Positions 11,330 to 55,947 are shown, counted from the stretch's first letter. The stretch: 64,000 nucleotides of DNA from Octopus bimaculoides (GCF_001194135.2 NC_068981.1:96431160-96495159); one strand, 5' to 3'. The notes: generated from the letters alone by a model not told the origin. A program made the numbers and translations.

Positions 11330-12123
11330 CTCATTCCATAATCATTAACTTCTGATGAGATTGGTTAATTACCTTGCATCTTGATTCCACCTGATCTCCA
11401 TGGAGTTTTGGATAACCAGAGAACTCCAGCCACCACAGCTGCAAGCTTTTTCATGAACCTGCCCCCAGACCAATCTCACATCTGTCAAGTCCTCCACAAT
11501 TTGTGACCAGTTCTTGATAGGTTTGCTACATCTCCTATGCTCCCAACTGGCTTCAATTTTAGTGTGGTTGTCACTGGTCTATTCATAGGCATGCATGCCA
11601 TGTACCTGAGCTTACATCTCATGGAATTAGTATCTCGTAGGTTACTTAGCCTGACTCTTTCTATGACTGTAATGTGATCATGGCAAAAAATTCTTAGTAT
11701 AGTCCTAAGGCAATGACTTCAGAAGACATTTGCAGTTTTATAAATCCTACCTTTTCCACCTCTCACAGGGATATGTCACTGTCATCAAAATGATGGATGT
11801 TTATAGAGTTTGGTACTTTCATTAATGTAGGAATTAGGGCATACAGCTTTCAGGTTCTGGAAGACAGCTGGAGCTTTACCAATTCTCTTTTCAACATCAT
11901 CACCTAGGTCTTCATTGTTATTGATGTTACTGCTAAGTATGTGAACAAATCAATGATTTTGCATGTGGACCTCCAACCAGATGTACTGCTATGCCTTACC
12001 AATAACCATCACTTTCATCATTTCATTGCTGAGACTGGCAATCAATTATTGTAGATATGATACTAAGGGGTTGCAGACCTTCAGTCTGTGAATCTCTTTC
12101 TCTCTCTCTTTCTTTCTCTCTTT

Positions 12124-12163
<40 letters not shown>

Positions 12164-30315: not shown

Positions 30316-30411
30316 TCACATAGAACGACGACACATACTGTATTTGCCTTTCTGTAGCTGTGTCAAATAAATGCGCAGCTTACTGTTGTTGTCACAACGC
30401 TTCACCCAGAT
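30316..30411 (-). CDS. SUDS3: SUDS3 exon 9 (terminal coding exon)
   Basis: ttttcag|ATCTGG...ATGTGA; [31 protein letters not shown]. Confidence 0.94.
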   Translation of the reverse strand: MWVKRCDNNSKLRIYLTQLQKGKYSMCRRSM

Positions 30412-33400
30412 CTGAAAATAAATAATATTGTTTTCATTAAAATATTTTGACATAATAATTCAGGTAAATAATAACTGAGACACAATTTCCATGAAAAACA
30501 ATAGTTATAACATATTCAATACAAGGAGCATTAAAAAAAAAAACTAAGGACAAGACAATAATCAATAACTAATATTTTCAATATTCCAGCAAATATGGGA
30601 AAGAGAGACAACTCTGAACATGTTTTGCTCATATTCTAACTTCATCAGCAACACAGCTTTCACTGTAATTGCTCAGGTAATGATGAAAGAATACTAGATA
30701 AATGCACATTAATATGTGAACACTAACCCGAATATTGCTTTTCTTTTGAATGACACCCCTGAATTATTCTATTTTTCTACATCAATCAACCTTGCACATT
30801 TATTCAATGATTCTATCATCACACATTCAGTAAGGATTATGAGGTAAGAATAAGGCCAAAACATGTCAGGAATTGTGTCCCCTCTATTTACCTTAAAATG
30901 AAAATATTCCCCATTCAGTCATTGTTGATACACTGCTGGATATAGCCTTAACCCTTTAACATTTGAACTGGGCATATCTGTGCCAAATATTTTGTTTTAT
31001 GTTCAAACCAACCAGATGTGACCTCACACACCTACCCTTCAAGATTCTAAAAATAAACAATCACATCAAAATCTACAAGATGAATTCAAACCAGTGTGAA
31101 TAAATAAGTATTATATTTGGCAGAATAATCTGGATACTAAAAGGTTAAATATGTTAACACAAACTTAACTAATGGTTTAGCTATTGATTAGCATCTTAAT
31201 ATTCCTTGCATTAAATATGTTGACTATAACTTGATTCAGGTACAATATATATACAATAAAGATGAAGTCAGTGTCTTTATATTAAATTATAATGAAGGTA
31301 CAGCCAGTGTCTATTGTACTGATCCAACAGAAGGTGGAGCTAGTGTCTACTCTATACTGATCTACAGTAATGTTACTTCAACATTTCACTTCCATTTCCA
31401 CAAAAAAACATGCACCTCCACCACAAACAAAGTATACGGTGTGTGTATGTATGTGCGTATATAGATATATTTTTTGTTTCAGTCATTTGACTGCAGCCAT
31501 GCTGAAGCACTGCCTTTAGTTAACCCCAGGACTTATTCTTTGTAAGCTTAGTACTTATTCTATTGGTTTCCTTTGCTGAGCCACTAAGTTACAGGGATGT
31601 AAACATACCAACAAACATATATACACGACAGACTTCTTTCAGTTTCCATCTACCAAATCTACTCACAAGGCTTTGGTCGGCCTGAGGCTATAGTAGAAGA
31701 CACTTGCCCAAGGTGCCATGCAGTGGGACTGAACCTGGAACCATATGGTTGGGAAGCAAGCTTCTTACCACACACCATAAAAAGCATGTGCTGGCATCAT
31801 GTAAGAAGCACCCAGCACACTCTGTAAAGTGGTTGGTATTAGGAAGGGCATCTGACCATAGAAACCAAAGCAAATCAGACTGGAATCTGATTCAGCCCAT
31901 GCCAGCATAGAAAACAGATGTTAAATAATGATTATGACACCTTATCACCACTATTTATCTCCTTGGAGATACCACCAATTCATTTTCACCCCGTCCTAAA
32001 TGTGAGTAGCCAAGTAGCGCCTCTATAAGAATATGCTCTACCCCAACCTCATCTCATACCTTAACCCCATCTAACATAAACACACACTCCCCTCCTCAGA
32101 TTATGTAGACTTGCAAAGGTGGCACAAAAACTAAAAACACCCAGTACACATTATACAGTGGTTGGTGTCAGGAAGGGATTTCAGACACAGAAACCATGCC
32201 AAACCAGACACTGGAACATGATGCAATCTTTGGACACATCAGATCCTGTCAAACCATCCAACTCATGCCAGCATGGAACATGGGCATTAAGTGACAATAA
32301 TGATATATATTCAAAAGAAATTTAAATTAAAAGTTTACTCTAAGTTTTATTTACTTATTTATTTATGCACCATTCTCAAGTAACCCATGCTTCACCTTAG
32401 GAAATACTGGTTTACAATGAAATGGGACTAGTGTCTATGTTTATCTACAATGAATGAGTTATCACTTAATGTCCATTGTCCATGCTAATATGGGTTGGAT
32501 GGTTTGACCAGAGCTGGCAAGCTGCATCTGACTCCAATCTGATTTGGCATGGTTTCTATGGCTGGATGCCCTTCCTAATGCCAACCTGTTTACAGAGTGC
32601 AGTGGGTGCTTTTACATGGACCTGCATGGGCGCTTTTATATGGCACCATACAGACGTTTTTATGTGGCACTGTCACAAGTGCTTGTCATCACCAGAAAGA
32701 CCAATCTTATCACTTCTGTTGCAGAGTACAAGTCTTCTTGTGTACAGCAAGGTGCCAGGCATTTCAAGCCTTTGTCATATTGACAGAAATATTAATCTGT
32801 TAAGGCACAGATATGACTATGTGGTACAAAGTCTGCTTCCTAACCACATGGTCCTGGGTTCAGTCCCATTGCGTGACACCTTAGGCAAGTGTCTTCTACT
32901 ATAGCCCTGAACCAACCAAAACCTTGTGAGTGGATTTAGAAGAAAGAAACTGAAAGAAACCTACCATGTGTATGCATGCTTGTGTGCATGTTGCTGTCTC
33001 CCTGCTTTGATATCTACCACCATCATTCACATCCATTGTCCATGCTGGTATGGGTTAAATGGTTTGACCAGGGCTGGTAAGCCAAGGGGCTGCACCAGAC
33101 GCCAGTCTGATTTGGTATGGTTTCTATGGCTGGATGCCCTACCTAATGCCAACCACTCCAAGGGTATAGTGGGTGCTTTTGCATGCCAGTTGCATAACAC
33201 CAGTATCTGCCACACCTACAATTTCACTTGGCTTGATGGGTCTTCTTCTCAAGTAGAGAATATTGCCAATGGTCTCAGTCATTTGTCATTGCCTGTGATA
33301 GTTATAAACAAGTCATGCAGGTGGTGTCTTTTGTTCTCTATGTTCTACAAGAACATGTCTAGCCAAGGGAAATATTACCTCGTTTGGAAACAAGTAAGGG

Positions 33401-36400
33401 TCGCTAACAGGGAGGGCATCTGATCTTAGAAAATTTGCCTCAAATTCTATCTAGACTGTGCAAGCATGGAAAAGTGGATATTCAAATGATGATGAATGCA
33501 GTTCATAGTCCAAGTCCAAACAAACCAGTCTTGCATCACTTAGAATTTGTAAAATACCAGTAATATATAATTATACCCTCCCTCACAAAAAATATCACTG
33601 TCTACACAAAAGTCATTACTACTTACAACAATACTGATTTGCTACAAAAGATATAACAGAGGTTATAAGAAATTTAGTACCCTTTAATATGAGTAAAAAA
33701 AACTGAGTTAATTTGTGGGAGGTAAATTATAATATAGGCTGTGAATATACCAGATATGAGGAACTTACCTCTTGCGTTCCTATGGTACTGATAATTCCCA
33801 TTATCTTCTCCATATCTTTGGCCTCAATATATACTGGCTGTCCCTTATGGAACCTAAAAATACAGTAGATAATGACAGAATCTGTCTCTTCCAAGATACA
33901 GAATGTCTAGAATAGCTTCAATAATGATACAACACCATTGACTCAGCTATGATTAGTGTGCAAATATGTTATATTTCAGTAGCTACCATACTAACAGTAA
34001 TAGTATCACTATAATTAAAATATCTATACAATTATTCTGGTAGCAATAGCTATGTTTACCATTCTAACAACTCACCACCATCTAGGCAGCAGTTGCATGT
34101 GTACTACTGTTCACACATAGAAGCATTAATGATATTAAATATCATCTTAGCAATACCTTTACTTCCATCTTTACACACTAGTACCAGTAATACTACCCAA
34201 ACTATTGTTATAGCTGCTATAGTAATGAAGACAACTTACAGTTAGTTGTCTAGCTATGTGTTCCCGCCCCAGACTAAACTGTTGCATGATGACTATCACT
34301 ATATAGTTACAGTGGATTACTCAGCACTACTCTCACCAAGCTAGAGAAGATGGCAGGGTCACAGGGTTTCTAAATGAATTGCAACAATTTAAATTCAACT
34401 TCAAAAATGAGTTAAATTCCCCCCCACATCATTCCAAATCATCAAAAAAGACTATGTAAGAAAAGATAACTTAAAAAGCGACAAACCTATCACCATTGTT
34501 TTCCAAAATCAGAAACAGTCAGTCAGTCAGTCAGTATGATACCAGGCTCACTTTTTAATCAGTATGAATTCTACAGCATACATATAAACAGTCTATAAGA
34601 AATTTTCATATTAAAAAACCAAGCATGGGCAACCTTTCTCAAGAGGCCAAACAATATGAGACATGGCTCAGCATCAGGCAGGCTGCACTACTAAAAAAAA
34701 ATTCAAGGTAATGTTTCAATAGGCATGCTTTCAGAGTCTCATGGGCTGCAGTTTGCCCATGACATATCCTTAAAATCAGACAGACTTCAATCAGTCATAC
34801 ACTTAGAGAGAAAATACTGAAATCACTGCATTTCTCTCACCCTTTTTCTGTCTACTGTATTATCATTACTATTCTGCTGTCCTTCATCCTTTCTGCACTA
34901 TTAGTCATCTCCTACTCTCCCTTACCTCCTCCCAATTCATATGTATCATTGATCACCTCACAACCCCTTATCCATCTTTCACTAATCTACCCCCTTAACT
35001 CTACCCAATATCTACAGTTGCCACCTGCTCTTCCTTCCTTATCATATTCACCCTGTCACCTATTCTCAATCTCTAACATCTCTCACTCTTCCATATGCTC
35101 TTGCAATCTCTACTCACCCCCATTCCTTGTTCTCCTGTCCCCACTCCTAGTCACCTTGACAATCCACTGACAATTGACTACCACTGTTTTTATCTTTCCA
35201 GTTCCACCCTGGTTACTCCCACCTCATCTTCTCTAATGCAAATAGCTATGCAGCTCCTCTACAACAAGATGCCTGTTCTGTTCTGGACCCTTCTCTCATA
35301 CTTTAATCCTTCATTTCTTAGCATAAACCTGATCCCCTCTCTTGTAGATTCAGTCATAGAAACCATGCCAAAGCAGACACTGGAGCATGATGCAATCCTT
35401 TTCAGAGCCCCCAAATCTTGTCAAACTGTCTAACTTATGCCAGCTTGGAACATGGACATTAAATGATGATGATAAAAAAAACTTGTACAACCACTCGATC
35501 AGAAACTCTCTTTCCTCTTGAAATACATCACACAAATGTCACACTCATCCTTTAATCCCCAACAGTATCCTCAAATTGTCCCCAAACCAAATTCCAAAAT
35601 ACTAGTCACTTTGACTGCACCTCCACTAACCTTATTTACCTGAAAATCTCTATGCAATGGTAAAACCAGCCATCATCATGTAGGTGACAATTCCTCAAAC
35701 ACCACCTTGATATTCAGAATAATACCCAAGTACTCTTTATACCAGCATAAACTTAACATTTCATCTCCATGGACCACTGCATGCTTTGTGCATCACCTTG
35801 CAACATAGTTCTTTCTGCACCTACAAACATTTTAATTTTAGTACAAAATTGCATACATAGGTATCAACAATGTTGGACCCTAACTGACTGTATTTCCTCT
35901 TTCTTTAACCTCACTTCCAACAGCATTTTATCATTAAGCTCCATTGTCCTTCTTTCAACTATTCGCCCCCTCTTCTGCTCTGCCTAATTCTTTACCACTG
36001 AATCAATCCCTAACTTTACTACCCAATTCTTCCTCTCATTTCCATTTTACCATAGGCCTCCCAAACTAATTCTTTCTACACAGCACTATACTTCATATAA
36101 TAACAGTAGTAGCAACTGATTCTTTCTCTCCCCCCTTTCAACATAAAACAGTTGTAAATGTAGTTTAATAGTGGAGAGTAACTGTTCACTCCTTCAATAA
36201 TGGGCCATGTTCAAATGTCAGGTTTCTCCATTTCCATTATGAACTTTTTCTACAGATGAAATCTTATCTAATGAATTGCTAAAACTGCTGCAGGTAACAG
36301 ATATCAGATAAAATGGCACAAAATCACACGTTTTTATAACATGGTTATGTCTGCTAAAGAGCTGTCCTATCAGAAGCATATTACATCATGTGAAGGAAGC

Positions 36401-39400
36401 CACAAAGACCTAATCTACCACTAATTCTAACCTTTTCCCAAAGCAAGTCACAGAGTACCTGGAGGAAGGTGAAATCCTTGGTAAAGGACAAAATGACATC
36501 AGTAGATCAGGTCAAAAATGCTAGTTACAGGCTGGACAGTATTGTAAGTTTTATACACACATCTGATTTCGATTTCCTCCAGTCACACAATACATACCAT
36601 CTTTTATCATAGTAAAGCCGGCCATCTTCAATTTTAGCCTCCATTGGCAGACTGCTATCTGCACTGTTTGGTGGAGAGACAGGCTTTTTTTGCAGAGGAC
36701 GTCCAGACAATTTATTCAATGCTTTCAGGTCTTCCAGAATCTCACTTTCATCAAGAATGTAATTTAGTTGAGGTGATTAGAATTAAGGAATACAAAATGA
36801 ATTTTTTCTTATTTTTCATTAAACAAACAGTAACATCATGTGAATGAGCAGAAATAAGGAAGAAAGAGTTCTAAAAGAGAGTCAAAAAAGCAATAGTAAA
36901 AGGATATCAGGAGAAGGTTTCCTCCTTTTCTCTGGAAGAGGCATAGGGTCATTAGGTCTCCGTCGTAGCTTCCGGGTCATAACAGGCTTCACTTCCATTG
37001 AGTCTAAAGGAAACACAAAAGTAGAACAGTTATAAAATTCATATCTTTCAGTATAAGGATTATTAAACTGTTTCTGCTGGTTGCCGACTTTGTCTTGAGA
37101 AAGACAATAGGTGAACCCTAACCATGGAATCCCACAAAAAGGGCAAGCAAGGCTGAAAGATTTCAATTTTGCTGAAGGTATTGCCCTAATAGGAGAAGAC
37201 TGGGCTTAAGAATCAGCACAACAAAGATGTAAGTGATGAAGGTGGACAATACCATTGACCAAGAAGCAACTATCAAAGTCAACCAGCACAAGATAGAAGC
37301 AAGCAAATATCACCTATCTGGGCACTGTTTTAAGCAAGCACTGATGATGTGGAATTGAACTAGACTAAAAGACAGGGAAGATGTCAGTAGTGTTCCAGCA
37401 TATGCATTTCATCTGGGTGGCCTCAAACATCAAACTAATGTGAAATTTTGTCTGCCTACAGCAATTTATGCTAGTGAGACTGAGAAGAGGAGAGTAAGGA
37501 CAGATAGAAAACTAAATGTATTCCATAAAAACTGCCTCAGAAAGATCCTGAGATCTAGGTCATGACCACTGCAAAAAAACTGTAGAACACAATTCAGCCT
37601 GAGTGACCACATTCTTCATTTGGCCAATCAACAACACTCAAAAATAACCATGACTTAGATACCACCTTTCAGCAGGTGTAAAAGAGAAAGAGCAAAGATC
37701 ACCTTGTGGAAGACATTTAAAGTTGGCCTGAAGACAGCATTACATGGAATGGATGTGCAAGAGTAGCAGCCAATCAAACACAAAGGAGGGAGCTTGCTGC
37801 TCAATGTGCTGAGCAGTGGAGGAAGACCTAAAGCTAAGAGAAAAAAACATAGCTTTTTAAATACCTTTAAATTCACTCACCTGCAACAACTTGTATAGAA
37901 GGATGCATTACCATCTAAAAATTAACTTAGTATTCCTATCCATCTATCTCCATAATATATAGTAAAGATTACTTACAGAGGTTTAAACCATAAATTTTTT
38001 TTTTAAAGAAAACAATAACAAGAAGCTGTACTTTGATAAAATAGTTCCATCTAAGATCAACCAAATTATAGAGTCAATTAAAGATAAGGATTATTTCACC
38101 TCCATTATCTTACTGATCCTCACCTTAAGAAATCCAGTTAGATGAAAAGCAAAAATCAGTCAGTAGAATTTAAAGTACTAAAATATACTTGGTCTAATAT
38201 GGTATCTTTTTTATCTATGCTAATTTCATTAACCTAACAATGGTAGTTTTTAGAAAAATGAAGCAGTTACAGCACACAACTGTAAACAATGAGAATGTCC
38301 TTCATTGATAAAACCAAACAAGGTTGAAATCATGTGATCTGGTGGTCTCAGCACTGGGGGTAGTAGGGATTTATCTCCCCACTAGCGATATAAACAGTGC
38401 ATTTTGCACTAAAAAGCTAATATGAAAGTTTCTCTCATGGTAACTACTACAGTGTAGCTTGTTCTAATAGAACATCCAAGTTTAAGTGAAGATAAATGAG
38501 AGAATTGTTTTGAAACTTGAACAGCCAGGTTATTTTAGCCAGGAGAAGGTAACAAGAAGCCACACCAGTGTCTAACTTCGAAATGGAGTCTTCGATCATC
38601 TCTTCCAGCAACGAGAAACAGTCTCTGGTTTTCATTTTAAACTATGTATGACTGCTAATTAGTCTACAACAGATCGTCCTACACTGGTATCCATCAGACC
38701 AAAATTTTTAAATCTTCATACTGAAATATTTCAATGATAACAGCTTTAAAATACTTGCTTTAATTGTTCTAATTTCCAGAATCATGGAAAAATGGAACAA
38801 TAATATTTCATTTATAAACGATTAACAACGAACATTTAAAATGCACTTAGAAGACCAATTCAACAAATGAAACTGCAATACTGAAAAAGTTCCTGGCTTT
38901 AAGGGTATTGCAAAAGGCCTAATTGGTGGCCCAACTTTCTGAGTTTTTTTATGGGGCTGAGAAAAACTGACAAAGGATCACTGCAATGAGTGTGTAAATC
39001 TGAGAAGGGAGTATATTGAATAAAATCATAATTAATTGATCCTCTTGTATTTTCATTTACCCAAAGCTAGGAACCTTTCAGTACCCCCTTGTACAGAGCT
39101 ACACTTTTTTAGAAAAAAATTAAGAGCCTCTTAACCATCCATATCATTTTCAAAAAAGGAAGGACATATTCAATAATGTAGTCCCAATTGCACCACGTCT
39201 GAAAATAAGAGGGGATGGTTGCGATAGGAATGTCTTTGATCAAAGGTCCAATGACATGGATCTAAACAGTAACTACATTAACTTACCTCCTGTTAATTCC
39301 ATGGTGCTACGTTCATTCTCAATATGTCTTTTCTTTTCTTCAAACTCAGCAATTAAATTTTCCTTCAACCCAAATTTCTTTTCCTTAAAAAAAGATTAAA

Positions 39401-42400
39401 CAATATATTTTTCTAATATGAAATAAAAGATATTTCCTTCTCAAAGGAAGTTATAACTAAATGCAAATGGAAAAATATAAATAAATGAAAAAGTCTGGCA
39501 GATGATACATTATAGTAGCCTTTCTCTCAAGAATGGATTCAATTTCACCAAGTCCAATTAAGTGCAGAAGAACAAGTGTCAAGCTCAGATCAAGTTCATC
39601 TTGCTCACCTCACCTCTGGCCATAACCATACAGAAATAGACTGAGTAGTAGATAGAATGTAACATACCCAAACTGTTGCTCTGCACTCAATGTGATTCCT
39701 CACCAAATGTCAAAGTGCACAGTATGGTCCTCAGCTCAGCACAGGCATGGTACATCTGGGACAGCTAATCTATGGGTCATGCCCATTTGCTTTGCATATG
39801 CATATGTGAGGTATACTACATTGGTAGATTAAATTCCTTATTGTCTTGGAGCCTGGTGCAGCCTTCTGGCTTGCCAGTCCTCAGTCAAATCATCTAACCC
39901 ATGCTAGCATGGAAAGCAGACGTTAAACGATGATGATGATGAAAGAGAGTGGCAAAAGCGATATGATTTTCACATTCCCCTCACCCCCACAAAAAAATAC
40001 AGTGACTGGACATGAATGTTCATATATACATTCACATGCTGACACACACACCTACATAAACACACAGTCCATTCACAAAGAGACTAACCAGAAAATAAGT
40101 AAATGTTTAATCACTCATCTTTCACAGAATACACCCTGTATACATACATGGACACACACACACATTCTCTCTCACACATTTACTCACAAAATCTACACTA
40201 TAACACACAGGTGCAAACACGTGTATGCACACATACAATAGCTCTACATGAATTTTAAAGTTATACTCTATATCTTAACAGCTACAGTCAAAATTTAGAT
40301 GAATAAATTAAAATCAACGTCAACAAAACCCACCTCAAAGTCCTTCACAGCAGCTTGTTTTTCTTTAATCCATTCTTTCTCAACAACTTCTTGCTACAAA
40401 ATACAATATTCATGACAGTGAAATGCTGTAGACAGCAACACTTTAAGCCAAAAATACAAAATATAGTTTCTCAAATATAAAAGCCAACCAAAAAGTTAAG
40501 TAAAACCAGATAAAACAACCAAATCTTTTTAAAGGGTTTCTAGCACTAGTCACAATGTGGTTGGAAGTGAAGATAAAATCAAGATTAGAAAGCTAATCAA
40601 GATTCAGCTAGATCCAACTAAAAATTTGAAGGTGAGACAATGGCTGAATAGCTGTTGTTTAATCAAAGCTCACCCCTAATTGAATAGACAAATGACTAAA
40701 GACATTCCAGCCATGACTGTCACATTTTTTTTTCAAGTAGTTTAACTGACTACATTACTCAGAATGCCTATTTTAAACAAGTAAAAGTGTGATATGAATA
40801 CGATTTAATTTATTTCTAGTATGCTCAACAATCATAAGAGGCTTGAAGGTAAATTGACAACACATTTAGTGGCTTACAGTTCAAACTATCCAAAGCCCTT
40901 ACAAATCAATAAGCTATGTACTTATACTGAAACTGGGACAATAATTTATTAGGCTACAATGCTGGAATGTTGAGTATCAGACCAGAAATTCAAACATTGC
41001 TTTACAAGCTACTGTAAATAGGAGCTTGAATTATCCAATTGTGAAGACAATTACACCAACAAGCTATTTTCATAAACTCAAATTTGCAAAAACTTTGCCA
41101 TTCACACAAGCATAGAAAACAGTAGGTATTATTTGTGGTTAGTCTTTTAACTATTTATATATTTAACTAAAACTAACTAAAACAAGTCAAAACTTAATAC
41201 CACATTAGTATGTTTGGTTACTTCTATGAGATAGACTTTTGTAAATAGGGTTAACTAAAGCTACTTAATGATATTAACTAAAAGAAAGAGAGAAGTCAGT
41301 CAGTACAGGTATTCTTCATGTTCATTCATATAAAGTTATACAGAATGCAATGACAGAAACAAGAGTTTCATTCAGACTTAAGTAATGGTAAGATCTTAGT
41401 AAGCCAAGTTCAAAACCTGGGTGAGATATTTTACTTCACTTACTATTTGAAACTGTAATTTCTAGCCACGGTTAACAGTCTAAAGAGGGTTGCAGTTTCC
41501 CAAGTTTGATTTTCTCTCCAAACAAAATGATAAAAAAAATATCTTCAGTGGTGACCCAACAACCCACTATGTGTTAAATCTCAAAAATAGATAAGTCTTT
41601 ATATGTGTAATACATTTCTATTACCTCGTAGCCTCTCCAAATCTCATTACTGAGCAGCCGGTCACGGTACTGTTGCTCAATCCGACAGTTTTTCTTCATA
41701 TATTCAGGAAGAACTCCTTCCTGTAATTGCTGTAGTTGCTTCTTTATTTGTAATAGTTTATCCTGGTACATCCTGAAACAAGGAGAAATCTCAGTAATTA
41801 TATGGTTATTAAAACCACTGCAGATAAATTGAACCTATAATTTCAAACCCTGCTTCAGCCATCTAAAACAAAAGCAATTTACTATACTTCTAAATAGTTT
41901 AAAGAATAGATGCCAGTTTGACAGATATAACAAAGAATATTAAAAGACAGTACATCGCAATCTAAAGATTCATTCAACTTACATCAGAACACACAAAAGA
42001 AAAAAAACACTTAAGTTTATTTTCCTTTAAAAAATTTATACCCACTATTATTTCATGCTAATAGTTCTGAAAATCTACACTAAGATACTCTTTCTTGTTA
42101 GAAGAATGCAGCATGGCCCAATCATTAAAATGTTCACTTTGCAAGTATGCGGTCCTGGCCTTGATCCTACTGCATATTATCTTGGGTACATGTCTTTTAC
42201 ACCATAGCCTGAAGTTGACTCAAGCCTTATCAGTGAAACTGGATAGATAATTGAATGAAAGCCCATCAAATGGATTGTACCCGTAATTTAATGGTGTAAC
42301 TTTGTCACACTAATTCTAACAGAGAATTATGTTAAAGCCACACATATCTGTGGAATGTTCAGCAACTTACATGCTAATTAAATGAAAATACAGATGAGTT

Positions 42401-45400
42401 GATTGAACAAGTGAATACTCATCATCCGAACTGATAGTGGTTCATTACTCTTCCCAGTACAAACTACATTAAGTGATAGATAGATTTGTCCAGGTTAAAC
42501 AGTTTATCACCAATCTCTAAACTAAGAGGTAACAGATGTACGTGTCTATTTATGAATGTTCTTTCAAGCATAGATCAAGAAATGAGAGCAATGTCTATAG
42601 CTGAACAGACTTTCCTGTCATCAACATCTATGGAATGACAGTGGTGTCTAAACATAATTAAATAAACAGAAGAAAGATGTGTAATATGATTTGAGATAAT
42701 AAAGAACCAAAGATAAAGCAAAACTCAATACTAACAAACAGTTCAGTTATTGGTCATTAATTTGAAAGAGGGTATCCAAGTGAACAGCATACTAAATAAA
42801 ATATCCAGACAAGCACATTGTATTTCCACAAAACCAAATACTGCATGACAGTGAGTACAGTCTCAACACTCTCAAATATTCATTTAGCTGGCATCAAGTT
42901 TCAATTTGTATCAACTGGACTGACTACTCCATAACACCAACATATCCCAACACTATACAACTACAACAATAGCATGTCAACTTACTGTTCCTTGATTTCC
43001 GTGTACTCCTCTTCTCGCTTGACCATGTCAGTTTCACTGGCATCTTCTGTGTCTATAAATAAAGTAATAAATGGTTTACAAACAATTATACTTGACACAG
43101 TAAATCTGACATAAAAGTATTGTATTTTGCACAACAATAAAATATGCCATTGGCATCTTGAAGTTAATTTTATGAGAAAATATGCATCAAGCCCAACATT
43201 GTGCACTCAGTACAAGCAACGAGTACAAAAATAATAAAGGCGAAAAATCTCTGTGAGAAAAACCAGAAATTTAAATATTGTAGATATACAAGCTGCAAGA
43301 ACATTCATCAAATGAAATTTCATGAACTGCTCAAATGACTCAACAAGGAGTCACATGGTCTCAAAAGAACCATGTGATCCTCTAGTAAACCATACCACAT
43401 TTTTAGGGTCACGTGAAGATAATATACATTCAGAGGCAAGGTGACATGATGCCAAGCATTAAAAATATACTATCAAACTACTAAAATCAAAATACAAGAT
43501 GACCACAAAGAAACTAGCATTTAACAATATCAGAAAAATAAAAGAATGCACTACTGGATGCAGTAAAGTTAGTCCCCAACCACTGTCCATCCAACTTATA
43601 TGTATGATTTTAATGTTTTATTTCCATTTCACCATTGAAGAAGGTAAGTAAGCAATCACTGTGTGTAAAGATTTTTGTGTAGTACCCAGAATCAAGATAT
43701 AGACAGCTGCAATTTCTGACCCTGGTTCCCAACGATATTGAACTGATTGTCTTTCTTCGTATGTTGGATATTTGAGCATTTGTACAGTGATAAGAAAGTT
43801 CAGTTCAGTAATTTGCTAGAGAACAGCATTCCAAATTGAGTGGTGCATCCATCTGGAGGAAATACAACTGATGTTTACATAACAAGAAATCCTCATTGAA
43901 TTACAAAATGATAAAACAATTCAAACAATAATGGAAATGTACTGAAAATGCAAAGAAGTTACCATGCCACGGAAAAGTGAATATAATATTGTTTTCCCCC
44001 ACTTCTTGTTGATTATGGTTTCATCCAGATGACTTACTTGCTATTAAAAGCTTGCAATTGCCTTGATATTGTAAGAAGTGATCTTTATCACTAACATTCA
44101 CTTTTGCATATATACAAACATATGCATATCTGTATAAATGAAGGGAACATGTGCATGAAAATTGCACATATGCACCAGACACAGTTTTACACTCATATAC
44201 ATACATATACACACACATATAAATATATATATACATACACACACACAATTATAAAGGAAAAAGGGAAAAAATGAAAATATATATATAAAAAAATTAAACA
44301 TTAATGGAAGTTAAAACATATGGAAAAGCTTGTGCAGGAACATAGTAGAAATGTGGATTCTAGCCATGATCTTTGGGGGCCCAAAACCATAACAGGTATT
44401 TTGTGACATGTGGACATGATCCAAAAAGTTCAGTTCTTGAATTTAAACATACAGCGAGGTCAAAATATCTATATTTTATTTTTAAAATATCCAAATTGTA
44501 ATGATAATAGAATTTAGAACTGAAAATCTGTCAATCTTGAAGCACTTCAGGGTAAACAATATTCATTGTATAATTTTTTGGTGTCAAAATGAATAAATTG
44601 TCACTACTACCAACTCGCAAGCAAGCTACATAGAGTTAACCATGGGAGAAGCATGTAGTACAGAGATCAAGTCCAACTTTGTTGAGGGACTGACCATGAG
44701 ATTTGTTAATTGAAATACCAAAACTTAGTTTAACTGGAAACTGAAGCATCTTAAATTCAAATAGAACATCTGTAGGTGTGAGAGGAATTTTTGGAATGAA
44801 GACATTTTCTCCTTTGTGACTACCTGTTATGATTGTTGCCTGTAGGACAATTAAGTGAGTTCCATTACACAGGTGAGATGGGTCAAAATTCCTAAGCAGC
44901 ATTATGGGAACACCCAGTTTTGGTGTCAAGTTATGCAGTGGTATCCCAGTCAGCTTAAGTGTGTCCAGAAATTCAACATGGTATTGAACAACTTGATCTT
45001 AATTGACTGTTGTCAACTGATCGAAAAGTTATTTCTAATGTATCTGTTAACTTTTGAAGTCCATGATTGAGTTTATCAACCATTTCATTAGTCGGAGCTA
45101 GTATAGTCTTTGAGATAGCCAGTTTACATCAGTGAAATTGACAGATAAATTAGGAAATACTTTATCCATAAGATCCCTAAGAGAAAGTATCATTTGACTG
45201 CATGTAATTTCATGTAGCTGAAGTCTTAAGTTAAATGTTGATATCCCATTACCAATCTTAAGAAGCTCGTATGATCACCTTGCGGAAGTACTCTGATGTT
45301 CCTTGTAAGATGAAGTTTTTTTACATGTCTCCAAAAGTACAATTTTTTTGAAGCATGCATTGACCTCATCAGCTTTCAATCCTTTGGGGACAACTGGCAA

Positions 45401-48400
45401 CATTTGATGAAAATCTCCTGCAAGAAGAACTGTTACTCCTCTCATGAGCATGCTACTGTTTTATATGTCTTGGAGGGTACAGTCAAGTACCTCTGGAGCT
45501 CCACAATGTGACAGTGCACTCATTCCAAACAATGAGGCAAATTTGTAGGAGAACTGTTGCCATTGCAGAGTTTTTGGAAATGTTGCACAATTGAGATTCT
45601 TTCATTGCAAGGTTTAGAGGGAGCTTGAACATGGAATGAGCAGTTCTTCCCCCATTGAGTGGGGTAGATGCAACACTGGAAGGTTAGATTTTTATTTCCT
45701 CCCATTTAGGATTGCAGGTGAAAGTGACAAAAAGATCTGGTTTTCCATATGTCCTGACATATGTCATAGCCTCTTGTGGTCATTCATGCATATATCATGG
45801 ACCACCTGTGAATGATGATGAGAGGATTATAAGTTGCCTCATGTTTTGAGTATCACCATCTGTCCTCAGAGCATCTTGGAGAAGAACATAATTTTTAGCC
45901 CTTAACTTTTTCTGATTGTTACAAATGTAGAGGAGACGCTCACTCTCAACTTCAGCATACATATCAACCAGCTATTACTGAAATAGATCACATGTGTAAT
46001 TGATTTGATTGTTCTGGTCTTACATCAGTTGGTAAGAATAGAAGTCATTTGACAACACTTTTTCTTTGTAATTGGCTCTCCTATTGCAGGTTCAATCTGT
46101 GGAATATTGAAATGATACCCATCTTGCCCATTCCACAAAATAAGAGGATACTGGAGAGCATCATAAGAGGGATGAATTTCTGAAATATGTTTAAGGTACC
46201 CACAGACATACATTCACGCACACCTCAGGCCTATCTCTGTCCCTCTGTGTGTCTGTCTCTGTCTTTAGAGGCATGCATGTGTGTGTGTGTGTGTGTGTGC
46301 ATGCCAGTTGTCATAAAAATGTATGTATACTGACAGACACACACACACACACATACTTTTCAGTCATTGGCCTAACGTAGGTAACAAACACGCAAACACA
46401 CACAGACAGACACACTCATATAGAAAATGTGTCATCGTCATGGTATAAAATGTTGTTTATAATTGGTGACTTATACAAAGATTATAATGTTAAATTTTTG
46501 TAATGCAAATATGTAAATGAAAATAAAAGTTTATTTACTAGCCAAAAGATTACTGAATTTTTTGATACCTCATACATCAAAATCGGCAACTCAGCTTTTT
46601 AATCCATAAGGAACATACACACACAAACTCTCTTTTATATATTAAGAGATTGGTTTCAAATTTTGGCACAAGGGCAACAATTTTGGGGGATGAGGTAAGT
46701 CAATTACATTAATCCCAGTGACCAACTGAGACTTAATTTTATTGACCCTGAAAGGCTAACCTGACCCTGGCAGTACTTGAACTCAAAATGTAAAGTCAGA
46801 AGAAATGCTGCTGAGCATTTTGTCCAGTGTGGAAATGGTTCTGCCAGATTAATATCCCAAGGACAGTAATTCCATCTTGCCTCACTTTAGAACAAGTGAA
46901 TATTTTGCGAGCATTGAGTTTTATTTATAAAAAATATAGCTGATGGTAGTTGTAACAGAGACGAAAATTAGCGACTGGTTAGAAGTAAGGGTTTGTAAAG
47001 ACACTGGGGTGAGGGGTTGTGGATCTACTAGGAGTGATGGGTGATAAGAGTGCTAAGGATTGTGGGAATAGTGAGTTCATAACTAGCTAAGATTTGTGGT
47101 GTATGTGTATATCATAGAAGCTGGGAGTATGGAAGAATTTTTCTTGGATAGGAATTTTAATCAACAACTAGGTTATTATGCTACCTGTAAAAATATTTGT
47201 CAATCATGCACATACCTTCATAAATAGTTCAAAGTGAAAAATTTCTTTTTTTTAATCTGTGTTGCATTGCCTGTATGTTGAAAGACACAGAAACACACAC
47301 AACCCCCAAAAAAATAATAATAACTATATTACAAATAAAAATATCTTTTTTTGGAAATCTGCATTATATTCTTGTTGACAGACTTGCACTTAAAAATTCT
47401 GTATAAAGATGTACATATAAACAAATATTCTGTTCACATGCCTACACATATATACTTAAAAGATGTGTACATTTGGGTGACATCAACACATGTGCATATA
47501 CATATGTACCCACATATGCACACATACAGATATGTATGCTTACATATACAAATTCACAAACAAAAAACAGAAATACTTATGTGACACCATAGTTTTAACA
47601 TACATTTTTCATGCTTGCACAGACACCCACAAGTATATGTATATACACAGATACAGACACGAATATACACAGACACACACAACTTTGGTCTTTGTTGAGT
47701 TAATTTTAAGACCAGTCAACTCTATGTTTTGCTTCTACACATAGAATTTCTTGTTTTAAGATTCTGTTATAAGAACAAAGTCATCAACATAACATAGTTC
47801 CCGTGGGGAAATAGTCTTAAATTCTTGTTACAATCTGGAAACCTATGATGAATAGGAGGAAATTAAAAACAACCTCAAATCATCATAATCATCATTTTAA
47901 AGTCCACTTTCCCAAGCTTGCATAGGTCAAAGGAGTTTGCTGACAGATTTTCTATGGTCAGATGCTCTTCCCATCACAAATCCTCACTGGTTTCTAAGCA
48001 AGATATTATTTTGCCATGGCCAGACATCTTTTTGCAAAAGATTGAAAATTAACGACATTGCTTGTATGACAGACCTACAGGTATCAAACATATCAATACA
48101 AGGGTCCCACCCCACACACACACACAAATGGGCTTCTTCCAGTTTTCATCTACCAAATCTACTCGTGAGGCTCTGATTTAAGAATATGTATGTATGGCTG
48201 TTTTTCTGAGCCCAAATGAAAGACAATACACAACCTTTTTGTTTGTGTATGCGTTGAACTGTATTACATGTATTTCTCCTCAATTTTCCACCCCACTTGT
48301 TGTCCTTCATGTTGTAAGATTTTCCTTTGTAATGTCAGTGATATTTACAGTAACTTGCACATTCATTTTTGTGACACCAACACCAGTACTTTTAATGAGG

Positions 48401-51400
48401 CACCAACATCGGTATCAATTCTGCTGTGACAGACAGGTCTTCTTGAGTACAGCAGTGCACTAGATCTCTTGATCCTTAGTCATCTCCTTCAAAAAGCTCA
48501 GTGTCTTAAAATCAGCCTTCAATACTTCATCCCATGTCTCCCTCTTCCACAAGTTCCATCCACTTAGACAGACAGACATACATAGAGATACAAAGAGAGA
48601 GCAAAGTGTGTAGCAAATTTTGTGTACAGTTAGATGTTCACCAGGGCTCAGTTCTCAGTTCCCTCTAATTCATCATAGTCCCTCCAAGTCATAACAGAAG
48701 AATTTAAGACCAGTTGCCCTAGGGAACTATTACATACTGATGACCTTGTTCTATTAGCAAAATCTGTAACAGAATTAGAAAAGAAATTCCAGGCATGAGA
48801 GCAAAACCTGCAATCAACCATAAAGTTGGCTTAGCAAAGACCAAACTTCTAGTAAGCAAAAAAAAAACAGACAGGATTCTAATCCTTTCAGAAAAATGGC
48901 CTGCTCAATATGAAGGAAAGATGTAGGTAGAAATTCCAATACAGTGTACCCAGTGCCAGCTATGGACACACAATCTGCAATGGAATCACAGGAAGGCTAA
49001 TGGAGAAAGACTCTGTGCGTAGCTGATGCACAGGAAAAATAAACACTAAGAACACACAAGAAATGAATTTTCTTGAATACCCAAGAGAGGTAAGACAGTT
49101 TTCTGTTACCAAGGTGACATAATTAGTAGTGGAGGAGGATATTCTGAAAGTTCAGTTGCTAGAATAAGAACAAGATGGAGAAAATTCATTGAGCTATTAT
49201 CTCTGTTGGTAATAAAAGGCCCCTCTGAGAGTGAAAGACAAATGCTCCCAATTTCCACCCTTACATGGCACTGACCTGCATTTCTGTCACAGTAGGTCTC
49301 TCTCTCTCTCTCCTTCTCATCCTATCTACTCTTCCAACCCACACAACATCTCCCTGTTTTTCCCCTATCTACAATTTTATTATACTGCTGCTCTCTACCA
49401 TTTGTATTCTGTCAATAACCACCACCTCCCTCCCCCCACTGAATTACTGGTCCATCAACCACAATTTCACTTTTGCTCACCATTATTTATATGCATCTCT
49501 ATAAAATGATTGGCATTAGGAAGAGCACCCAGCCTTACAAACCATGTCAAAATAAACAGTGGAGCTGTTTCCAGTTCGTTGGATCCTGTCAAACTGTCCA
49601 ACCCATGCCAACATGGAAGACAGATGATTTATAGGACAGCTGTCTTCGAAGACTCATATTGTTGTTGATTGCTCGAAATGGGGAGTAGATAGACAGCCGA
49701 CAACTGATGAAGGGTCATTCTTTGTATTACTTGTCCCTTTTTTCACTCGTTATTTGCGTATTTAACTTACTTGTTTTCATATTTCATGTTGTTTACTGTT
49801 GGTGATGTCCTGTACCCATATATGCATATACACCATTTCGAGCATGGCCGTCGCCAGTACTGTCTGACTGGCCCTCGTGCCAGTGGCATGTAAAAGCACC
49901 CACTACACTCTTGGAGTGGTTGGTGTTAATAAGGGCATCCAACTATAGAAACTCTGCCAAATCAGATTGGAGCCTGGTGTCGCCTCCTGGTTCACCAGTC
50001 CTCAGTCAAATCGTCCAACCCATGCTAGCATGGAAAGCGGACGTTAAACGACGACGATGATGATATATATATATTATTCAATTGAATGCCACGCATCCAT
50101 TTCCAAGTAAGTTTATCTTAACCTTTTTAATGCAACTCTTCCCTATCCTCTCTAAGTTTCTAATTCTCCCCTATCCTCTCTAATTCCCTTTTTCTCCCTC
50201 CCACCGTTATCTATCTCTCTGCTCACACGTGACCATTGTCAATCTTTCTTTTCCTCACATAACCATCTTTCTTTCTTACACCTTCACACACACATTCATT
50301 TCATATACACGTACATACATCTTTCACTTTCTGCTCTCACTTGAAAGCAAATGTTGCCTTTTCACTTTCTCCTTTCTTCAAAGCATAAAGAAATAAAAAA
50401 ATTTCTACGGAAATTAACGAACAACTATATGATTGTGTTGACATTTCTTAACAATTTTGCTGCTTCTATCAAAAGAATACCGGGAATATGTATCATATAC
50501 GATGCCTGGATGCCAGGGAAATATGTCCTGTGTATCACATGTGTGTGACACAGGATGGGCAAAGTACTAGGCTTAAAAAATAGGTACTGGGGTCGATTCA
50601 TTTGACTAAAAATACTTCAAGGCGGTGCCCTAGCATGACTGCAGTCTAATGACTGAACAAGATAAAATATTTAAAGACGCCCAGTACTAAGGTTTGGTAA
50701 AGCAAGTTCATACAATCCATTTAATGTTTGTGCCCATAGTGTGGTCGCCTTTGTAAGCTGAATACAATTTATCCACCATCATCACCACCCTGTAGAAACA
50801 AGTTAACTCGATCTGGCAAACATGGTGTTTCAAAAATATATCGTCGACAGGCGCAGGCGTGACTGTGTGTTAGGAAGTTCACTCCCAAACCATATGGTTC
50901 TGGGTTTGAGTCCAGCTGCGTGGCACATTAGGCACATTGTACAATAGCTAAGCGCCAACGAAAGCCTTGTGGGTGGGTTTGGTTGATGGAAACTGAAAAA
51001 AGCCCTGGCTGGTGTGTATGTGTGTTTGTCCTTTACTATCGCTTGATAACTGATGTTGGTTTGTTTATGTCCCCCAAAACTTAGCTGTTCGTCAAAAATG
51101 ACCAACAGAATAAGTACCAGGATTTTAAAAATAAGTACTGGGGTCAATTCATTCAAGATGGTGCTCCAACATGACCGCATTCTAAGACTGATTTCTGCTC
51201 CCCACCCCGACTTTGGATGATCATAACTTTCAGAAAAATGGATATTTTTAAATGACATTTTCTACGAATGTGTATGTATATCATGTAGATTCCGAACATA
51301 CAAAATTGGGGGGGGGTAGGAGGGGGGTGAGGAATTTCGGAAAATTCACCAGAGTCCACTTCAATTCGTCTTAAATTTCAAGAAAATGCATATTTTTTAA

Positions 51401-53092: not shown

Positions 53093-53650
53093 CCTCCTTC
53101 TCAACATTCAAAATAAATGGTTTTTGAATAGTTAAAAATCTCAACTTCAGAAAAATAAGAAAAAATTATTCTTCTTACTCTCAGCTACTAAAGCTGGTTA
53201 CAAATAAATTTCCTAATATTTTGATTCCCGACTGAAAGCCCCAACGTTCTGTAATAAACAACAGAACGACATTGCTGCTGCAACTCGAACATGCGCAGTT
53301 AGTATTTCCTTTGTAATATACATGGTCCACCTCCCCTACCACGATGTTAGCTGAACTCAAACATAACTATCATTTCTTTCATATTCCCCGCAATTTCGTA
53401 ACTTTAAGGGGAATATTAATTGCTTAAAAAATAATGATAATAGAATATATTTCGAGTGTAATGCTGAAATGGTTACATTTATTTAATGAAAAGAAAACAA
53501 TGTTGAAATTTTCGTTATTGATTGGTCAATAATGCTGGCTGTTGCATAGCAACAAATTTAAAATTGTTATCCATGATATAAATACTATCGCGCGCGGATG
53601 TCATCCAAACAAGTAAAAATAGACTACTACTAGTGTGTGCGATCAATATA
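53093..53650 (-). promoter_or_regulatory. SUDS3 5'UTR/promoter region, locally CpG-enriched
   Basis: Directly upstream of exon 1; NRF1-like CATGCGCA at 53290-53297 and CGCGCGCG at 53589-53596; CpG visibly denser than elsewhere in the window. Confidence 0.55.
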
Positions 53651-54277: not shown

Positions 54278-54654
54278 NNNNNNNNNNNNNNNNNNNNNNN
54301 NNNNNNNNNNNNNNNNNNNNNNNNNNNNNNNNNNNNNNNNNNNNNNNNNNNNNNNNNNNNNNNNNNNNNNNNNNNNNNNNNNNNNNNNNNNNNNNNNNNN
54401 NNNNNNNNNNNNNNNNNNNNNNNNNNNNNNNNNNNNNNNNNNNNNNNNNNNNNNNNNNNNNNNNNNNNNNNNNNNNNNNNNNNNNNNNNNNNNNNNNNNN
54501 NNNNNNNNNNNNNNNNNNNNNNNNNNNNNNNNNNNNNNNNNNNNNNNNNNNNNNNNNNNNNNNNNNNNNNNNNNNNNNNNNNNNNNNNNNNNNNNNNNNN
54601 NNNNNNNNNNNNNNNNNNNNNNNNNNNNNNNNNNNNNNNNNNNNNNNNNNNNNN
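54278..54654. other. Assembly gap (N run)
   Basis: N bases. Confidence 1.
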
Positions 54655-55934: not shown

Positions 55935-55947
55935 NNNNNNNNNNNNN
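55935..55947. other. Assembly gap (N run) in (TA)n context
   Basis: N bases. Confidence 1.

What the first reader, a model, noticed from the sequence alone, without database searches (positions are those of the whole stretch)
36773..36907. U12-type AT-AC minor intron in SUDS3
Seen: exon 6 ends ...CCTTCTCCTG|ATATCCTTT, the U12 donor consensus, with no usable GT. TTCCTTAAT (consensus TTCCTTAAC) lies 9 nt before a terminal CAC. Splicing AT to AC restores ...KPSP-A-QLNYIL..., matching human SDS3 KPAPAQLNYLL. Established: AT-AC introns with these motifs need the U11/U12/U4atac/U6atac spliceosome and are rare. Inference: the host keeps a working minor spliceosome, and GT-AG-only annotation would break this gene. 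I recall SUDS3/BRMS1-family genes being listed as minor-intron genes in vertebrates, which would make this position ancient; I could not verify that.
Basis: partly seen in the sequence, partly recalled or inferred. Interest (0 to 1): 0.75.

Follow-up and report, generated by a model that had tools for sequence, protein, structure and literature searches.

The report
Known minor intron in octopus SUDS3
The 135-base AT-AC interval is a genuine minor-spliceosome (U12-type) intron in the Octopus bimaculoides SUDS3 gene, but it matches the well-studied human SUDS3 intron 7 and the public octopus annotation already splices it correctly, so it is real but ordinary.

Summary
On the minus strand, exon 6 ends at 36908 (…CCTTCTCCTG). 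It is followed by ATATCCTTT, then TTCCTTAAT 9 nt before the intron end (…CAC, 36773), and exon 7 starts at 36772. Joining 36908 to 36772 gives …[17 protein letters not shown]…. Read-through hits in-frame stops, and any GT-AG alternative deletes at least 36 residues.

The window is Octopus bimaculoides chromosome CM046601.1. RefSeq XP_014778457.1 (SDS3 isoform X1) equals MLRRR plus my 9-exon model, so the annotation already uses this AT-AC junction. The other seven introns are GT-AG.

An AT-AC intron with the U12 boxes sits in the same codon and phase in O. sinensis, an orb-weaver spider, a catfish, a bullfrog and human. In human it is SUDS3 intron 7, typed U12 AT-AC and retained on CENATAC or ZRSR2 depletion (PMC8280824). 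A beetle and a thrips have lost it. Human BRMS1L (AT-AC) and BRMS1 (GT-AG) carry a U12 intron within one codon of the aligned position.

No RNA reads of this species could be examined. Splicing here is inferred from the annotation, from spliced transcripts of another cephalopod and a tick, and from orthology. Verdict: supported, already known, low interest.

The parts
30316..53107 (-). SUDS3 (SDS3) gene, CDS span. Nine coding exons: E1 53107(or 53092)-52981, E2 43052-42986, E3 41772-41625, E4 40393-40334, E5 39383-39287, E6 37003-36908, E7 36772-36598, E8 33853-33769, E9 30411-30316.
   Evidence: Exon model and translation. MLRRR plus the model is identical to RefSeq XP_014778457.1. The annotated gene span in L010 maps to window 53107-30316. 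Pfam Sds3 PF08598.
36908..37003 (-). Exon 6, encoding (D)[31 protein letters not shown] plus the first base (G) of the Ala codon.
36773..36907 (-). Intron 6: a 135-nt U12-type AT-AC intron, phase 1. It contains in-frame stop codons if retained.
   Evidence: Orthologous AT-AC introns in O. sinensis, spider, catfish, frog and human.
36899..36907 (-). 5' splice-site box ATATCCTTT, a 9/9 match to the U12 AT-AC donor consensus.
   Evidence: Identical in O. sinensis, spider, frog and catfish; human has ATATCCATT.
36782..36790 (-). Branch-site box TTCCTTAAT (consensus TTCCTTAAC). The presumed branch A is at 36783, 10 nt from the last intron base.
   Evidence: The spacing from motif end to 3' splice site is 8-9 nt in all six species.
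36773..36775 (-). 3' splice site ...CAC|, with terminal dinucleotide AC.
36598..36772 (-). Exon 7. It starts with the last two bases of the Ala codon, then [21 protein letters not shown], the Sin3-interaction domain (SID), and runs on to ...[11 protein letters not shown].
   Evidence: The SID was identified by a match to PDB 2N2H.

Best explanation
Window 36907-36773 (minus strand) is intron 6 of the Octopus bimaculoides SUDS3 gene. SUDS3 encodes the SDS3 subunit of the Sin3/HDAC corepressor. The intron is a U12-dependent (minor-spliceosome) intron of the AT-AC subtype and is orthologous to human SUDS3 intron 7.

Mechanism, from established knowledge of U12 introns and not tested here: U11 snRNA, and later U6atac, pairs with the ATATCCTTT box. 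U12 snRNA pairs with TTCCTTAAT and bulges the branch adenosine about 10 nt from the 3' end. The two transesterifications then join 36908 to 36772, restoring the Ala codon G|CT and the frame ...KRRKPSPAQLNYIL....

The intron lies immediately upstream of the sequence encoding the Sin3-interaction domain. If it is retained, an in-frame stop truncates the protein before that domain.

Shown here: the sequence anatomy, exact agreement with the annotated protein, and positional and type conservation across Bilateria. Inferred: actual removal in this species and dependence on the minor spliceosome.
For: Anatomy:
- The donor matches 9/9, the branch site 8/9, and 9 nt separate the branch-site motif from the 3' junction.
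- It is the only non-GT-AG intron of the eight in the gene.
- Read-through hits in-frame stops and no GT or AG is nearby.
- The best GT-AG alternative deletes 36 aa.

Annotation:
- The window is identical to GCA_001194135.2 CM046601.1.
- XP_014778457.1 equals MLRRR plus my AT-AC-spliced model.
- The O. sinensis, O. vulgaris and Argonauta hians models carry the same KPSPAQLNY junction.

Transcripts:
- An uninterrupted 936-nt ORF on ~2.9 kb contigs, indexed in 28 blocks of the collection (two contigs read, from different SRA runs), encodes an 86%-identical cephalopod-like SDS3 with KPSPAQLNY.
- An Ixodes transcript contig reads KTSPTQLNF.

Orthology:
- AT-AC introns with the same boxes sit in the same codon and phase in O. 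sinensis (the 5' box and the whole branch-site-to-3'ss stretch are identical, although the gene's aligned DNA, mostly intronic, is only ~92% identical overall).
- The same holds in Trichonephila, Tachysurus and Aquarana.
- Human SUDS3 intron 7 is typed U12 AT-AC.

Experiment in the human orthologue:
- The intron is retained on CENATAC depletion, and the paper ran RT-PCRs of it under ZRSR2 knockdown (PMC8280824).
- It served as the U12 lariat test intron in RBM41 RIP experiments.
Against: No RNA reads from O. bimaculoides could be examined, so use of the junction in this species rests on a 'PREDICTED' RefSeq model whose transcript support I could not inspect. The minor-spliceosome snRNA genes of the host could not be searched; the window has 0 Rfam hits. 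The motifs alone are not statistically rare. Pyrimidine content upstream of the 3' splice site does not distinguish this intron from its GT-AG neighbours (0.70 against 0.55-0.85), so absence of a polypyrimidine tract cannot be used as an argument.
Confidence: 0.94

Rival explanations
1. It is a U2-type (major-spliceosome) AT-AC intron, the rare class spliced by U1/U2/U4/U6 despite AT-AC termini.
For: AT-AC termini alone do not prove U12 dependence. PMC8280824 mentions 85 major AT-AC or related introns in human. The pyrimidine content near the 3' end is as high as in the neighbouring U2 introns.
Against: The donor is the extended U12 box ATATCCTTT (9/9). A TTCCTTAAT box sits 9 nt from the 3' end, and that spacing is conserved in six species. 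The human orthologue is typed U12 and responds to depletion of minor-spliceosome factors, whereas major AT-AC introns did not respond.
Confidence: 0.02
2. The mRNA uses other, GT-AG, splice sites or skips an exon, and the AT-AC join is a predictor's guess.
For: Database models from Astyanax, Strix, bullfrog and Tachysurus do use other junctions around this site. XP_014778457.1 is a predicted model.
Against: There is no GT or AG near the boundaries. All six frame-preserving GT-AG alternatives remove 36-73 conserved residues, including [10 protein letters not shown] and half of the Sin3-interaction domain. Assembled transcripts of another cephalopod and a tick, plus a mammalian retrocopy, carry the full junction peptide. 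The shortened models in other species lack conserved residues, and in the bullfrog and Tachysurus genomes those residues are encoded right up to an ATATCC donor.
Confidence: 0.02
3. It is not an intron. The locus would be a pseudogene or misassembly, and the 135 nt an insertion.
For: There are N runs in the window.
Against: The nearest N run is more than 17 kb away (54278-54654). All nine exons give an intact 311/316-aa ORF. A 136-nt intron sits at the same site in an independent O. sinensis assembly. Orthologous introns exist in arthropod and vertebrate genomes.
Confidence: 0.01

Closest known systems
Human SUDS3 intron 7 (chr12:118400755-118401758, hg38), a U12-type AT-AC 'A-type' minor intron used as an RT-PCR and lariat test intron (PMC8280824; PMC11039992)
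   Same: Same gene, same codon (the Ala after K-P-x-P), same phase 1, and the same AT-AC subtype. The donor box is ATATCC(A/T)TT. A TCCTT(T/A)AAY-type branch box lies 9 nt from the 3' junction. The downstream exon begins with the Sin3-interaction domain.
   Different: Length is 1004 nt in human against 135 nt in octopus. It is numbered intron 7 rather than 6, so the human transcript has one more exon upstream. Human has a one-base difference in the donor box (ATATCCATT) and TCCTTTAAC at the branch site. Minor-spliceosome dependence is shown experimentally in human only.
Human BRMS1L (U12 AT-AC) and BRMS1 (U12 GT-AG) minor introns, in paralogues of the Sds3-like family
   Same: Both are typed U12 in the same dataset and both are phase 1. 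In a BLASTP alignment the split codon (LVS-G-P) falls within one codon of the SDS3 split codon, next to a 3-residue gap and just before the conserved (I/L)xxLxExxILED helix.
   Different: They are paralogues, not orthologues. BRMS1 has switched to the GT-AG subtype. Exact positional identity is uncertain by one codon, and the BRMS1 protein used for the alignment was recalled from memory; only its exon-end codons were checked against the paper.
U12-type introns of molluscs as catalogued in the pan-eukaryotic intronIC survey (Larue and Roy 2023, PMC10639083)
   Same: Molluscs are reported as relatively rich in minor introns, and Octopus sinensis is one of the representative species in the conservation matrix. 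This intron is an ordinary member of that set.
   Different: I could not see the per-intron tables, so I cannot confirm that this particular intron is listed there.

Membership tests
U12-type (minor-spliceosome) intron, AT-AC subtype | Extended 5' splice-site box /(A|G)TATCCTTT at the first intron bases | tested here: met
   ATATCCTTT at 36907-36899, a 9/9 match.
U12-type (minor-spliceosome) intron, AT-AC subtype | Branch-site box TTCCTTRAY close to the 3' end (branch A roughly 10-15 nt from the 3' splice site) | tested here: met
   TTCCTTAAT at 36790-36782. Nine nt lie between the motif and the junction, and the branch A is about 10 nt from the last intron base. The same spacing (8-9 nt) is seen in six species.
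U12-type (minor-spliceosome) intron, AT-AC subtype | Terminal dinucleotides AT...AC at boundaries that restore the reading frame | tested here: met
   The join 36908|36772 gives an open frame identical to RefSeq XP_014778457.1.
U12-type (minor-spliceosome) intron, AT-AC subtype | Actual removal from the mRNA at these boundaries in this organism | tested here: inconclusive
Support is indirect: a predicted RefSeq model, spliced transcripts of another cephalopod and of a tick with the same junction peptide, and a mammalian retrocopy.
U12-type (minor-spliceosome) intron, AT-AC subtype | Splicing depends on U11/U12/U4atac/U6atac snRNPs | not testable with these tools
   For the human orthologue only: the paper's datasets list the intron as retained after CENATAC depletion, and it ran RT-PCRs of the intron under ZRSR2 knockdown. 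It was also a U12 lariat test intron in RBM41 RIP.
U12-type (minor-spliceosome) intron, AT-AC subtype | Host genome encodes the minor-spliceosome snRNAs | not testable with these tools
   Only the 64-kb window could be scanned, with 0 Rfam hits. No eukaryotic genome collection is searchable here. The literature reports minor introns in molluscs, including Octopus.
U12-type (minor-spliceosome) intron, AT-AC subtype | Positional orthology with an established U12 intron | tested here: met
   Same codon and phase as human SUDS3 intron 7 and as the AT-AC introns of frog, catfish, spider and O. sinensis.
SDS3/SUDS3 (Sin3-HDAC corepressor subunit) | Sds3-like domain, Sin3-interaction domain and conserved C-terminal domain; orthology to animal SDS3 | tested here: met
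   Pfam PF08598, 64 bits against a cut-off of 25.4. PDB matches to SDS3 4ZQA, 2N2H (SID) and 7SXI (C-terminal domain). 55-65% identity over the full length to named SDS3 proteins of molluscs, annelids and vertebrates.

The most novel reading that the evidence does not exclude
The minor intron has been kept for more than 550 million years at the exact upstream edge of the Sin3-interaction-domain exon. It is there in SDS3 of vertebrates, chelicerates and cephalopods, and probably in the paralogues BRMS1 and BRMS1L. One reading my evidence does not exclude is that it acts as a switch: when minor-spliceosome activity is low, the intron is retained, an in-frame stop truncates the protein before the SID (or triggers NMD), and assembly of Sin3/HDAC complexes becomes coupled to minor-spliceosome activity. 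The evidence also fits plain neutral persistence of an ancestral intron, which is what the pan-eukaryotic survey favours for most minor introns.
Probability: 0.1. Interest if true: 0.5.

Novelty: already known. Interest (0 to 1): 0.12.

Why it matters
There is little new biology here. SUDS3 is an established minor-intron gene, molluscs are known to keep the minor spliceosome, and RefSeq already models this junction in O. bimaculoides, O. sinensis, O. vulgaris and Argonauta.

The practical value is in quality control. The site is a good sentinel for annotation pipelines, because several public SDS3 models (Astyanax, Strix, bullfrog, Tachysurus) silently drop 4 to 15 conserved residues here, having forced GT-AG sites. 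The comparison also documents that the intron dates back at least to the protostome-deuterostome ancestor, that it was cleanly lost in two insects, and that it probably predates the SDS3/BRMS1 duplication.

Tried and rejected
- **RNA-seq mapping.** I did not try to get round this.
- **A second minor intron in the window.** ATATCCTTT at 22972(+) with TTCCTTAAT at 25193(+) looked like a pair. The 'donor' is in fact the codons E-Y-P-F inside a ubiquitin-conjugating-enzyme exon ([10 protein letters not shown]), so I rejected it as coincidence. The other ATATCCTTT sites (22107-, 62053-) have no coding context.
- **The reindeer hit P0002.** I expected a mammalian intron-containing locus. It is an intronless 154-aa ORF, probably a retrocopy.
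- **Look-up of my 311-aa model by exact sequence.** The 316-aa form matched.
- **Oyster and Lingula loci.** No gene with exactly those products is on record. The Ixodes look-up returned only transcript contigs.
- **'No polypyrimidine tract' as an argument.** Rejected, because pyrimidine content does not discriminate here.
- **Supplementary tables of PMC10639083 for octopus counts.** Nothing is held.
- **PDB search for a BRMS1/BRMS1L chain covering the intron position.** None found, so I used a BRMS1 sequence recalled from memory for the alignment.

Full report
**1. What is in the sequence**

The feature lies on the minus strand.
- Exon 6 is 37003-36908 and ends ...AAA CCT TCT CCT G.
- The next bases are ATATCCTTTTAC.
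- 135 nt later the interval ends ...GTATTCCTTAATTCTAATCAC at 36773.
- Exon 7 is 36772-36598 and begins CT CAA CTA AAT TAC ATT CTT.

Joining 36908 to 36772 gives [53 protein letters not shown]..., in phase 1. Reading through the 135 nt runs into in-frame stops. There is no GT between 36925 and 36880 and no AG between 36800 and 36750. Within exon 6 + intron + exon 7, only six GT-AG combinations keep the frame open, and they delete 36 to 73 conserved residues. One small imprecision: the 9 nt after TTCCTTAAT run to the splice junction, not to the CAC.

**2. Is it more than chance?**

The motifs by themselves are not rare.
- ATATCCTTT occurs 4 times in the window against 1.27 expected.
- TTCCTTAAY occurs 5 times against 2.2 expected.
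- A relaxed donor plus branch-site pair within 500 nt appears in 14% of simulated windows.

One other same-strand pair, 22972/25193 on the plus strand, turned out to be a coincidence. The 'donor' there is the codons E-Y-P-F inside a ubiquitin-conjugating-enzyme exon. What makes the SUDS3 site real is its placement. Both boxes sit exactly at the ends of two conserved coding exons, with the correct spacing and frame, and the arrangement recurs in other genomes (section 4).

**3. The gene and the organism**

Using fragments of SDS3 homologues, plus a human SDS3 probe recalled from memory and used only to locate exons, I mapped nine coding exons on the minus strand between 53107 and 30316. The product is 311 aa from the ATG at 53092, or 316 aa from an in-frame ATG at 53107. 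Seven introns are GT...AG and 950-9928 nt long. Only intron 6 is AT-AC, and it is by far the shortest at 135 nt.

- The protein has the Pfam Sds3 domain.
- It matches PDB entries for three SDS3 regions: 4ZQA, the 2N2H Sin3-interaction domain, and the 7SXI C-terminal domain.
- A full-length search gave Octopus sinensis SDS3 isoform X1 as best hit, 309/311 identical.
- That cluster also contains the O. bimaculoides isoform X1, XP_014778457.1 (316 aa), which is exactly MLRRR plus my model.
- The genomic locus of that protein (GCA_001194135.2, CM046601.1) is an exact substring of the window's minus strand, 54107-29316, and the annotated gene span maps to 53107-30316.

So the window is O. bimaculoides, and the public annotation already splices this AT-AC intron.

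**4. Comparative evidence**

| Species | Source | Intron length | Donor context | Branch site to acceptor |
|---|---|---|---|---|
| O. bimaculoides | window | 135 nt | CTCCTG\|ATATCCTTT | TTCCTTAAT TCTAATCAC\| |
| O. sinensis | L007 | 136 nt | identical | identical |
| Trichonephila (spider) | L004 | 121 nt | ...CCTA\|ATATCCTTT | TTCCTTAAT TTAATTTAC\| |
| Tachysurus (catfish) | L003 | 207 nt | ...CCGG\|ATATCCTTT | ATCTTTAAC TCCTCACAC\| |
| Aquarana (bullfrog) | L002 | 2998 nt | ...CCTG\|ATATCCTTT | TGCCTTAAC CTTCATAC\| |
| Human | PMC8280824 supplement | 1004 nt | CCTGCTCCAG\|ATATCCATTT | TCCTTTAAC TCTCAACAC\|CCCAGC |

- The O. sinensis intron is 131/136 identical to the window's. The 5' box and the whole branch-site-to-acceptor stretch are unchanged, although the gene's aligned DNA, which is mostly intronic, is only about 92% identical overall.
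- All of these introns interrupt the same codon after its first base.
- In human, the CENATAC paper types chr12:118400755-118401758 as 'U12, AT-AC'. Its RT-PCR primers are labelled 'Ex 7 Fwd', which encodes RPNDPV, and 'Ex 8 Rev', whose complement encodes IMEDLRT. Human 'intron 7' is therefore this position.
- The paper's datasets list the intron as retained after CENATAC depletion, and it ran RT-PCRs of the intron under ZRSR2 knock-down. The intron also served as a U12 lariat test in the RBM41 study.
- A beetle (Rhamnusium, L005) and a thrips (Frankliniella, L006) have continuous coding sequence across the site, a clean loss.

Transcript-level support for the junction peptide:
- An uninterrupted 936-nt ORF on ~2.9 kb contigs encodes an 86%-identical cephalopod-like SDS3 with KPSPAQLNY. 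The index lists it in 28 blocks, and the two contigs read come from different SRA runs.
- An Ixodes transcript contig reads KTSPTQLNF.
- An intronless reindeer ORF, probably a retrocopy, carries KPAPAQLNY.

**5. The paralogues**

In the same human dataset, BRMS1L carries a U12 AT-AC intron (GTTGTTTCAG|ATATCCTTT ... GACCTTGAC ... AAC|GTCCAT). BRMS1 carries a U12 GT-AG intron (CTGGTTTCTG|GTATCCTTT ... TTCCTTGAC ... CAG|GCCCAT). Both split a Gly codon after its first base, in ...(L/V)VS-G-P....

In a BLASTP alignment of BRMS1 with octopus SDS3, that codon falls one residue from the SDS3 Ala codon, directly after a 3-residue gap. I recalled the BRMS1 sequence from memory; its LVSGP agrees with the paper's exon ends. 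Within alignment uncertainty the positions coincide. This suggests, but does not prove, that the minor intron predates the SDS3/BRMS1 duplication.

**6. How it most likely works**

This part rests on established knowledge of U12-dependent splicing and was not tested here. The U11/U12 di-snRNP recognises the ATATCCTTT box (U11) and the TTCCTTAAT box (U12, with the branch adenosine bulged) together. U4atac/U6atac.U5 then joins, and U6atac replaces U11 at the 5' splice site. The terminal T of the octopus and spider branch box, where the consensus has C, would still allow a G-U pair with the human-type U12 sequence.

Because the 135 nt carry in-frame stops, retention would truncate SDS3 just before its Sin3-interaction domain, which starts at the first full codon of exon 7. 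Whether that has any regulatory use is speculation.

**7. What could not be done**

- No RNA reads of O. bimaculoides were accessible.
- The host's snRNA genes could not be searched. The window itself contains no Rfam family at gathering threshold.
- That octopus has a working minor spliceosome is therefore an inference. It rests on the conserved U12 boxes under about 8% background divergence and on the literature: molluscs are relatively rich in minor introns, and O. sinensis is used as a representative species (PMC10639083).
- Pyrimidine content near the 3' end does not separate this intron from its neighbours, so I do not use it as an argument.

**8. Annotation consequences**

Database models for Astyanax and Strix read DKRRKP·LNYLL, dropping APAQ. 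Models for bullfrog and Tachysurus read RRRPNDP·LNYLL. Yet the bullfrog and Tachysurus genomes encode the missing residues right up to an ATATCC donor. In octopus the RefSeq models are correct.

**9. Verdict**

The feature is an ordinary, already known minor intron. It is the orthologue of human SUDS3 intron 7 and is correctly annotated in this genome. Interest is low.

Noticed in passing
Proteins P0008 (Astyanax), P0013 (Strix), P0041 (Aquarana, locus L002), P0061 (Tachysurus, locus L003): Public SDS3 models skip 4-15 conserved residues exactly at the AT-AC junction (DKRRKP·LNYLL or RRRPNDP·LNYLL). The bullfrog and Tachysurus genomes encode those residues up to an ATATCC donor. This is typical GT-AG-only mis-annotation of a minor intron.
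   Followed up: partly
L005 2004-2180 (Rhamnusium bicolor) and L006 488-643 (Frankliniella occidentalis): The two insects have continuous coding sequence across the site, a precise loss of the minor intron. In the beetle the gene is also split into two adjacent annotated genes (1240-1876 and 1893-2252).
   Followed up: partly
L001 3001-3465 (Rangifer tarandus, OX459942.2): An intronless 154-aa ORF covers the C-terminal half of SDS3 and has a few substitutions. It is probably a processed retrocopy annotated as a protein.
   Followed up: no
window 44636-44938 (-), within a wider stretch of about 45900-44600, inside SUDS3 intron 1: A remnant of a Pif1-type helicase (Pfam Pif1_2B_dom, E=1e-10), as carried by Helitron-like transposons. 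The frame is interrupted upstream.
   Followed up: partly
window 247-681 (-): A 144-aa ORF with a reverse-transcriptase domain (Pfam RVT_1, E=1e-14), a retrotransposon fragment at the window edge.
   Followed up: partly
window 22916-23044 (+): An exon of a ubiquitin-conjugating enzyme ([43 protein letters not shown]; Pfam UQ_con), UBE2L3-like from memory. It contains a chance ATATCCTTT. The neighbouring gene lies on the opposite strand to SUDS3.
   Followed up: partly
window 53107 vs 53092 (-): The RefSeq O. bimaculoides model starts at an upstream in-frame ATG (MLRRR-MAAS...) in a weak context (TGA ATG T). The O. sinensis, O. vulgaris and Argonauta models start at MAAS/MSAS, whose ATG has a strong context (AGG ATG G). 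The shorter 311-aa start may be the real one.
   Followed up: partly
window 13803-13921, 54278-54654, 55935-55947: Assembly gaps (N runs). The 377-nt gap lies about 1.2 kb upstream of the SUDS3 start codon, in the likely promoter region.
   Followed up: no
P0246 (O. bimaculoides isoform X2, 256 aa) and P0245 (O. sinensis X2, 251 aa): An annotated short isoform ends at ...GRLYYDKR, right at the end of exon 7 (window ~36598). It lacks the conserved C-terminal domain, which implies an alternative 3' end or retention of intron 7 (a GT-AG intron), unrelated to the minor intron.
   Followed up: no
window 12093-12163 and about 46240-46400: Simple repeats: (TC)n at 12093-12163 and (GT)n/(CA)n tracts in SUDS3 intron 1.
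   Followed up: no
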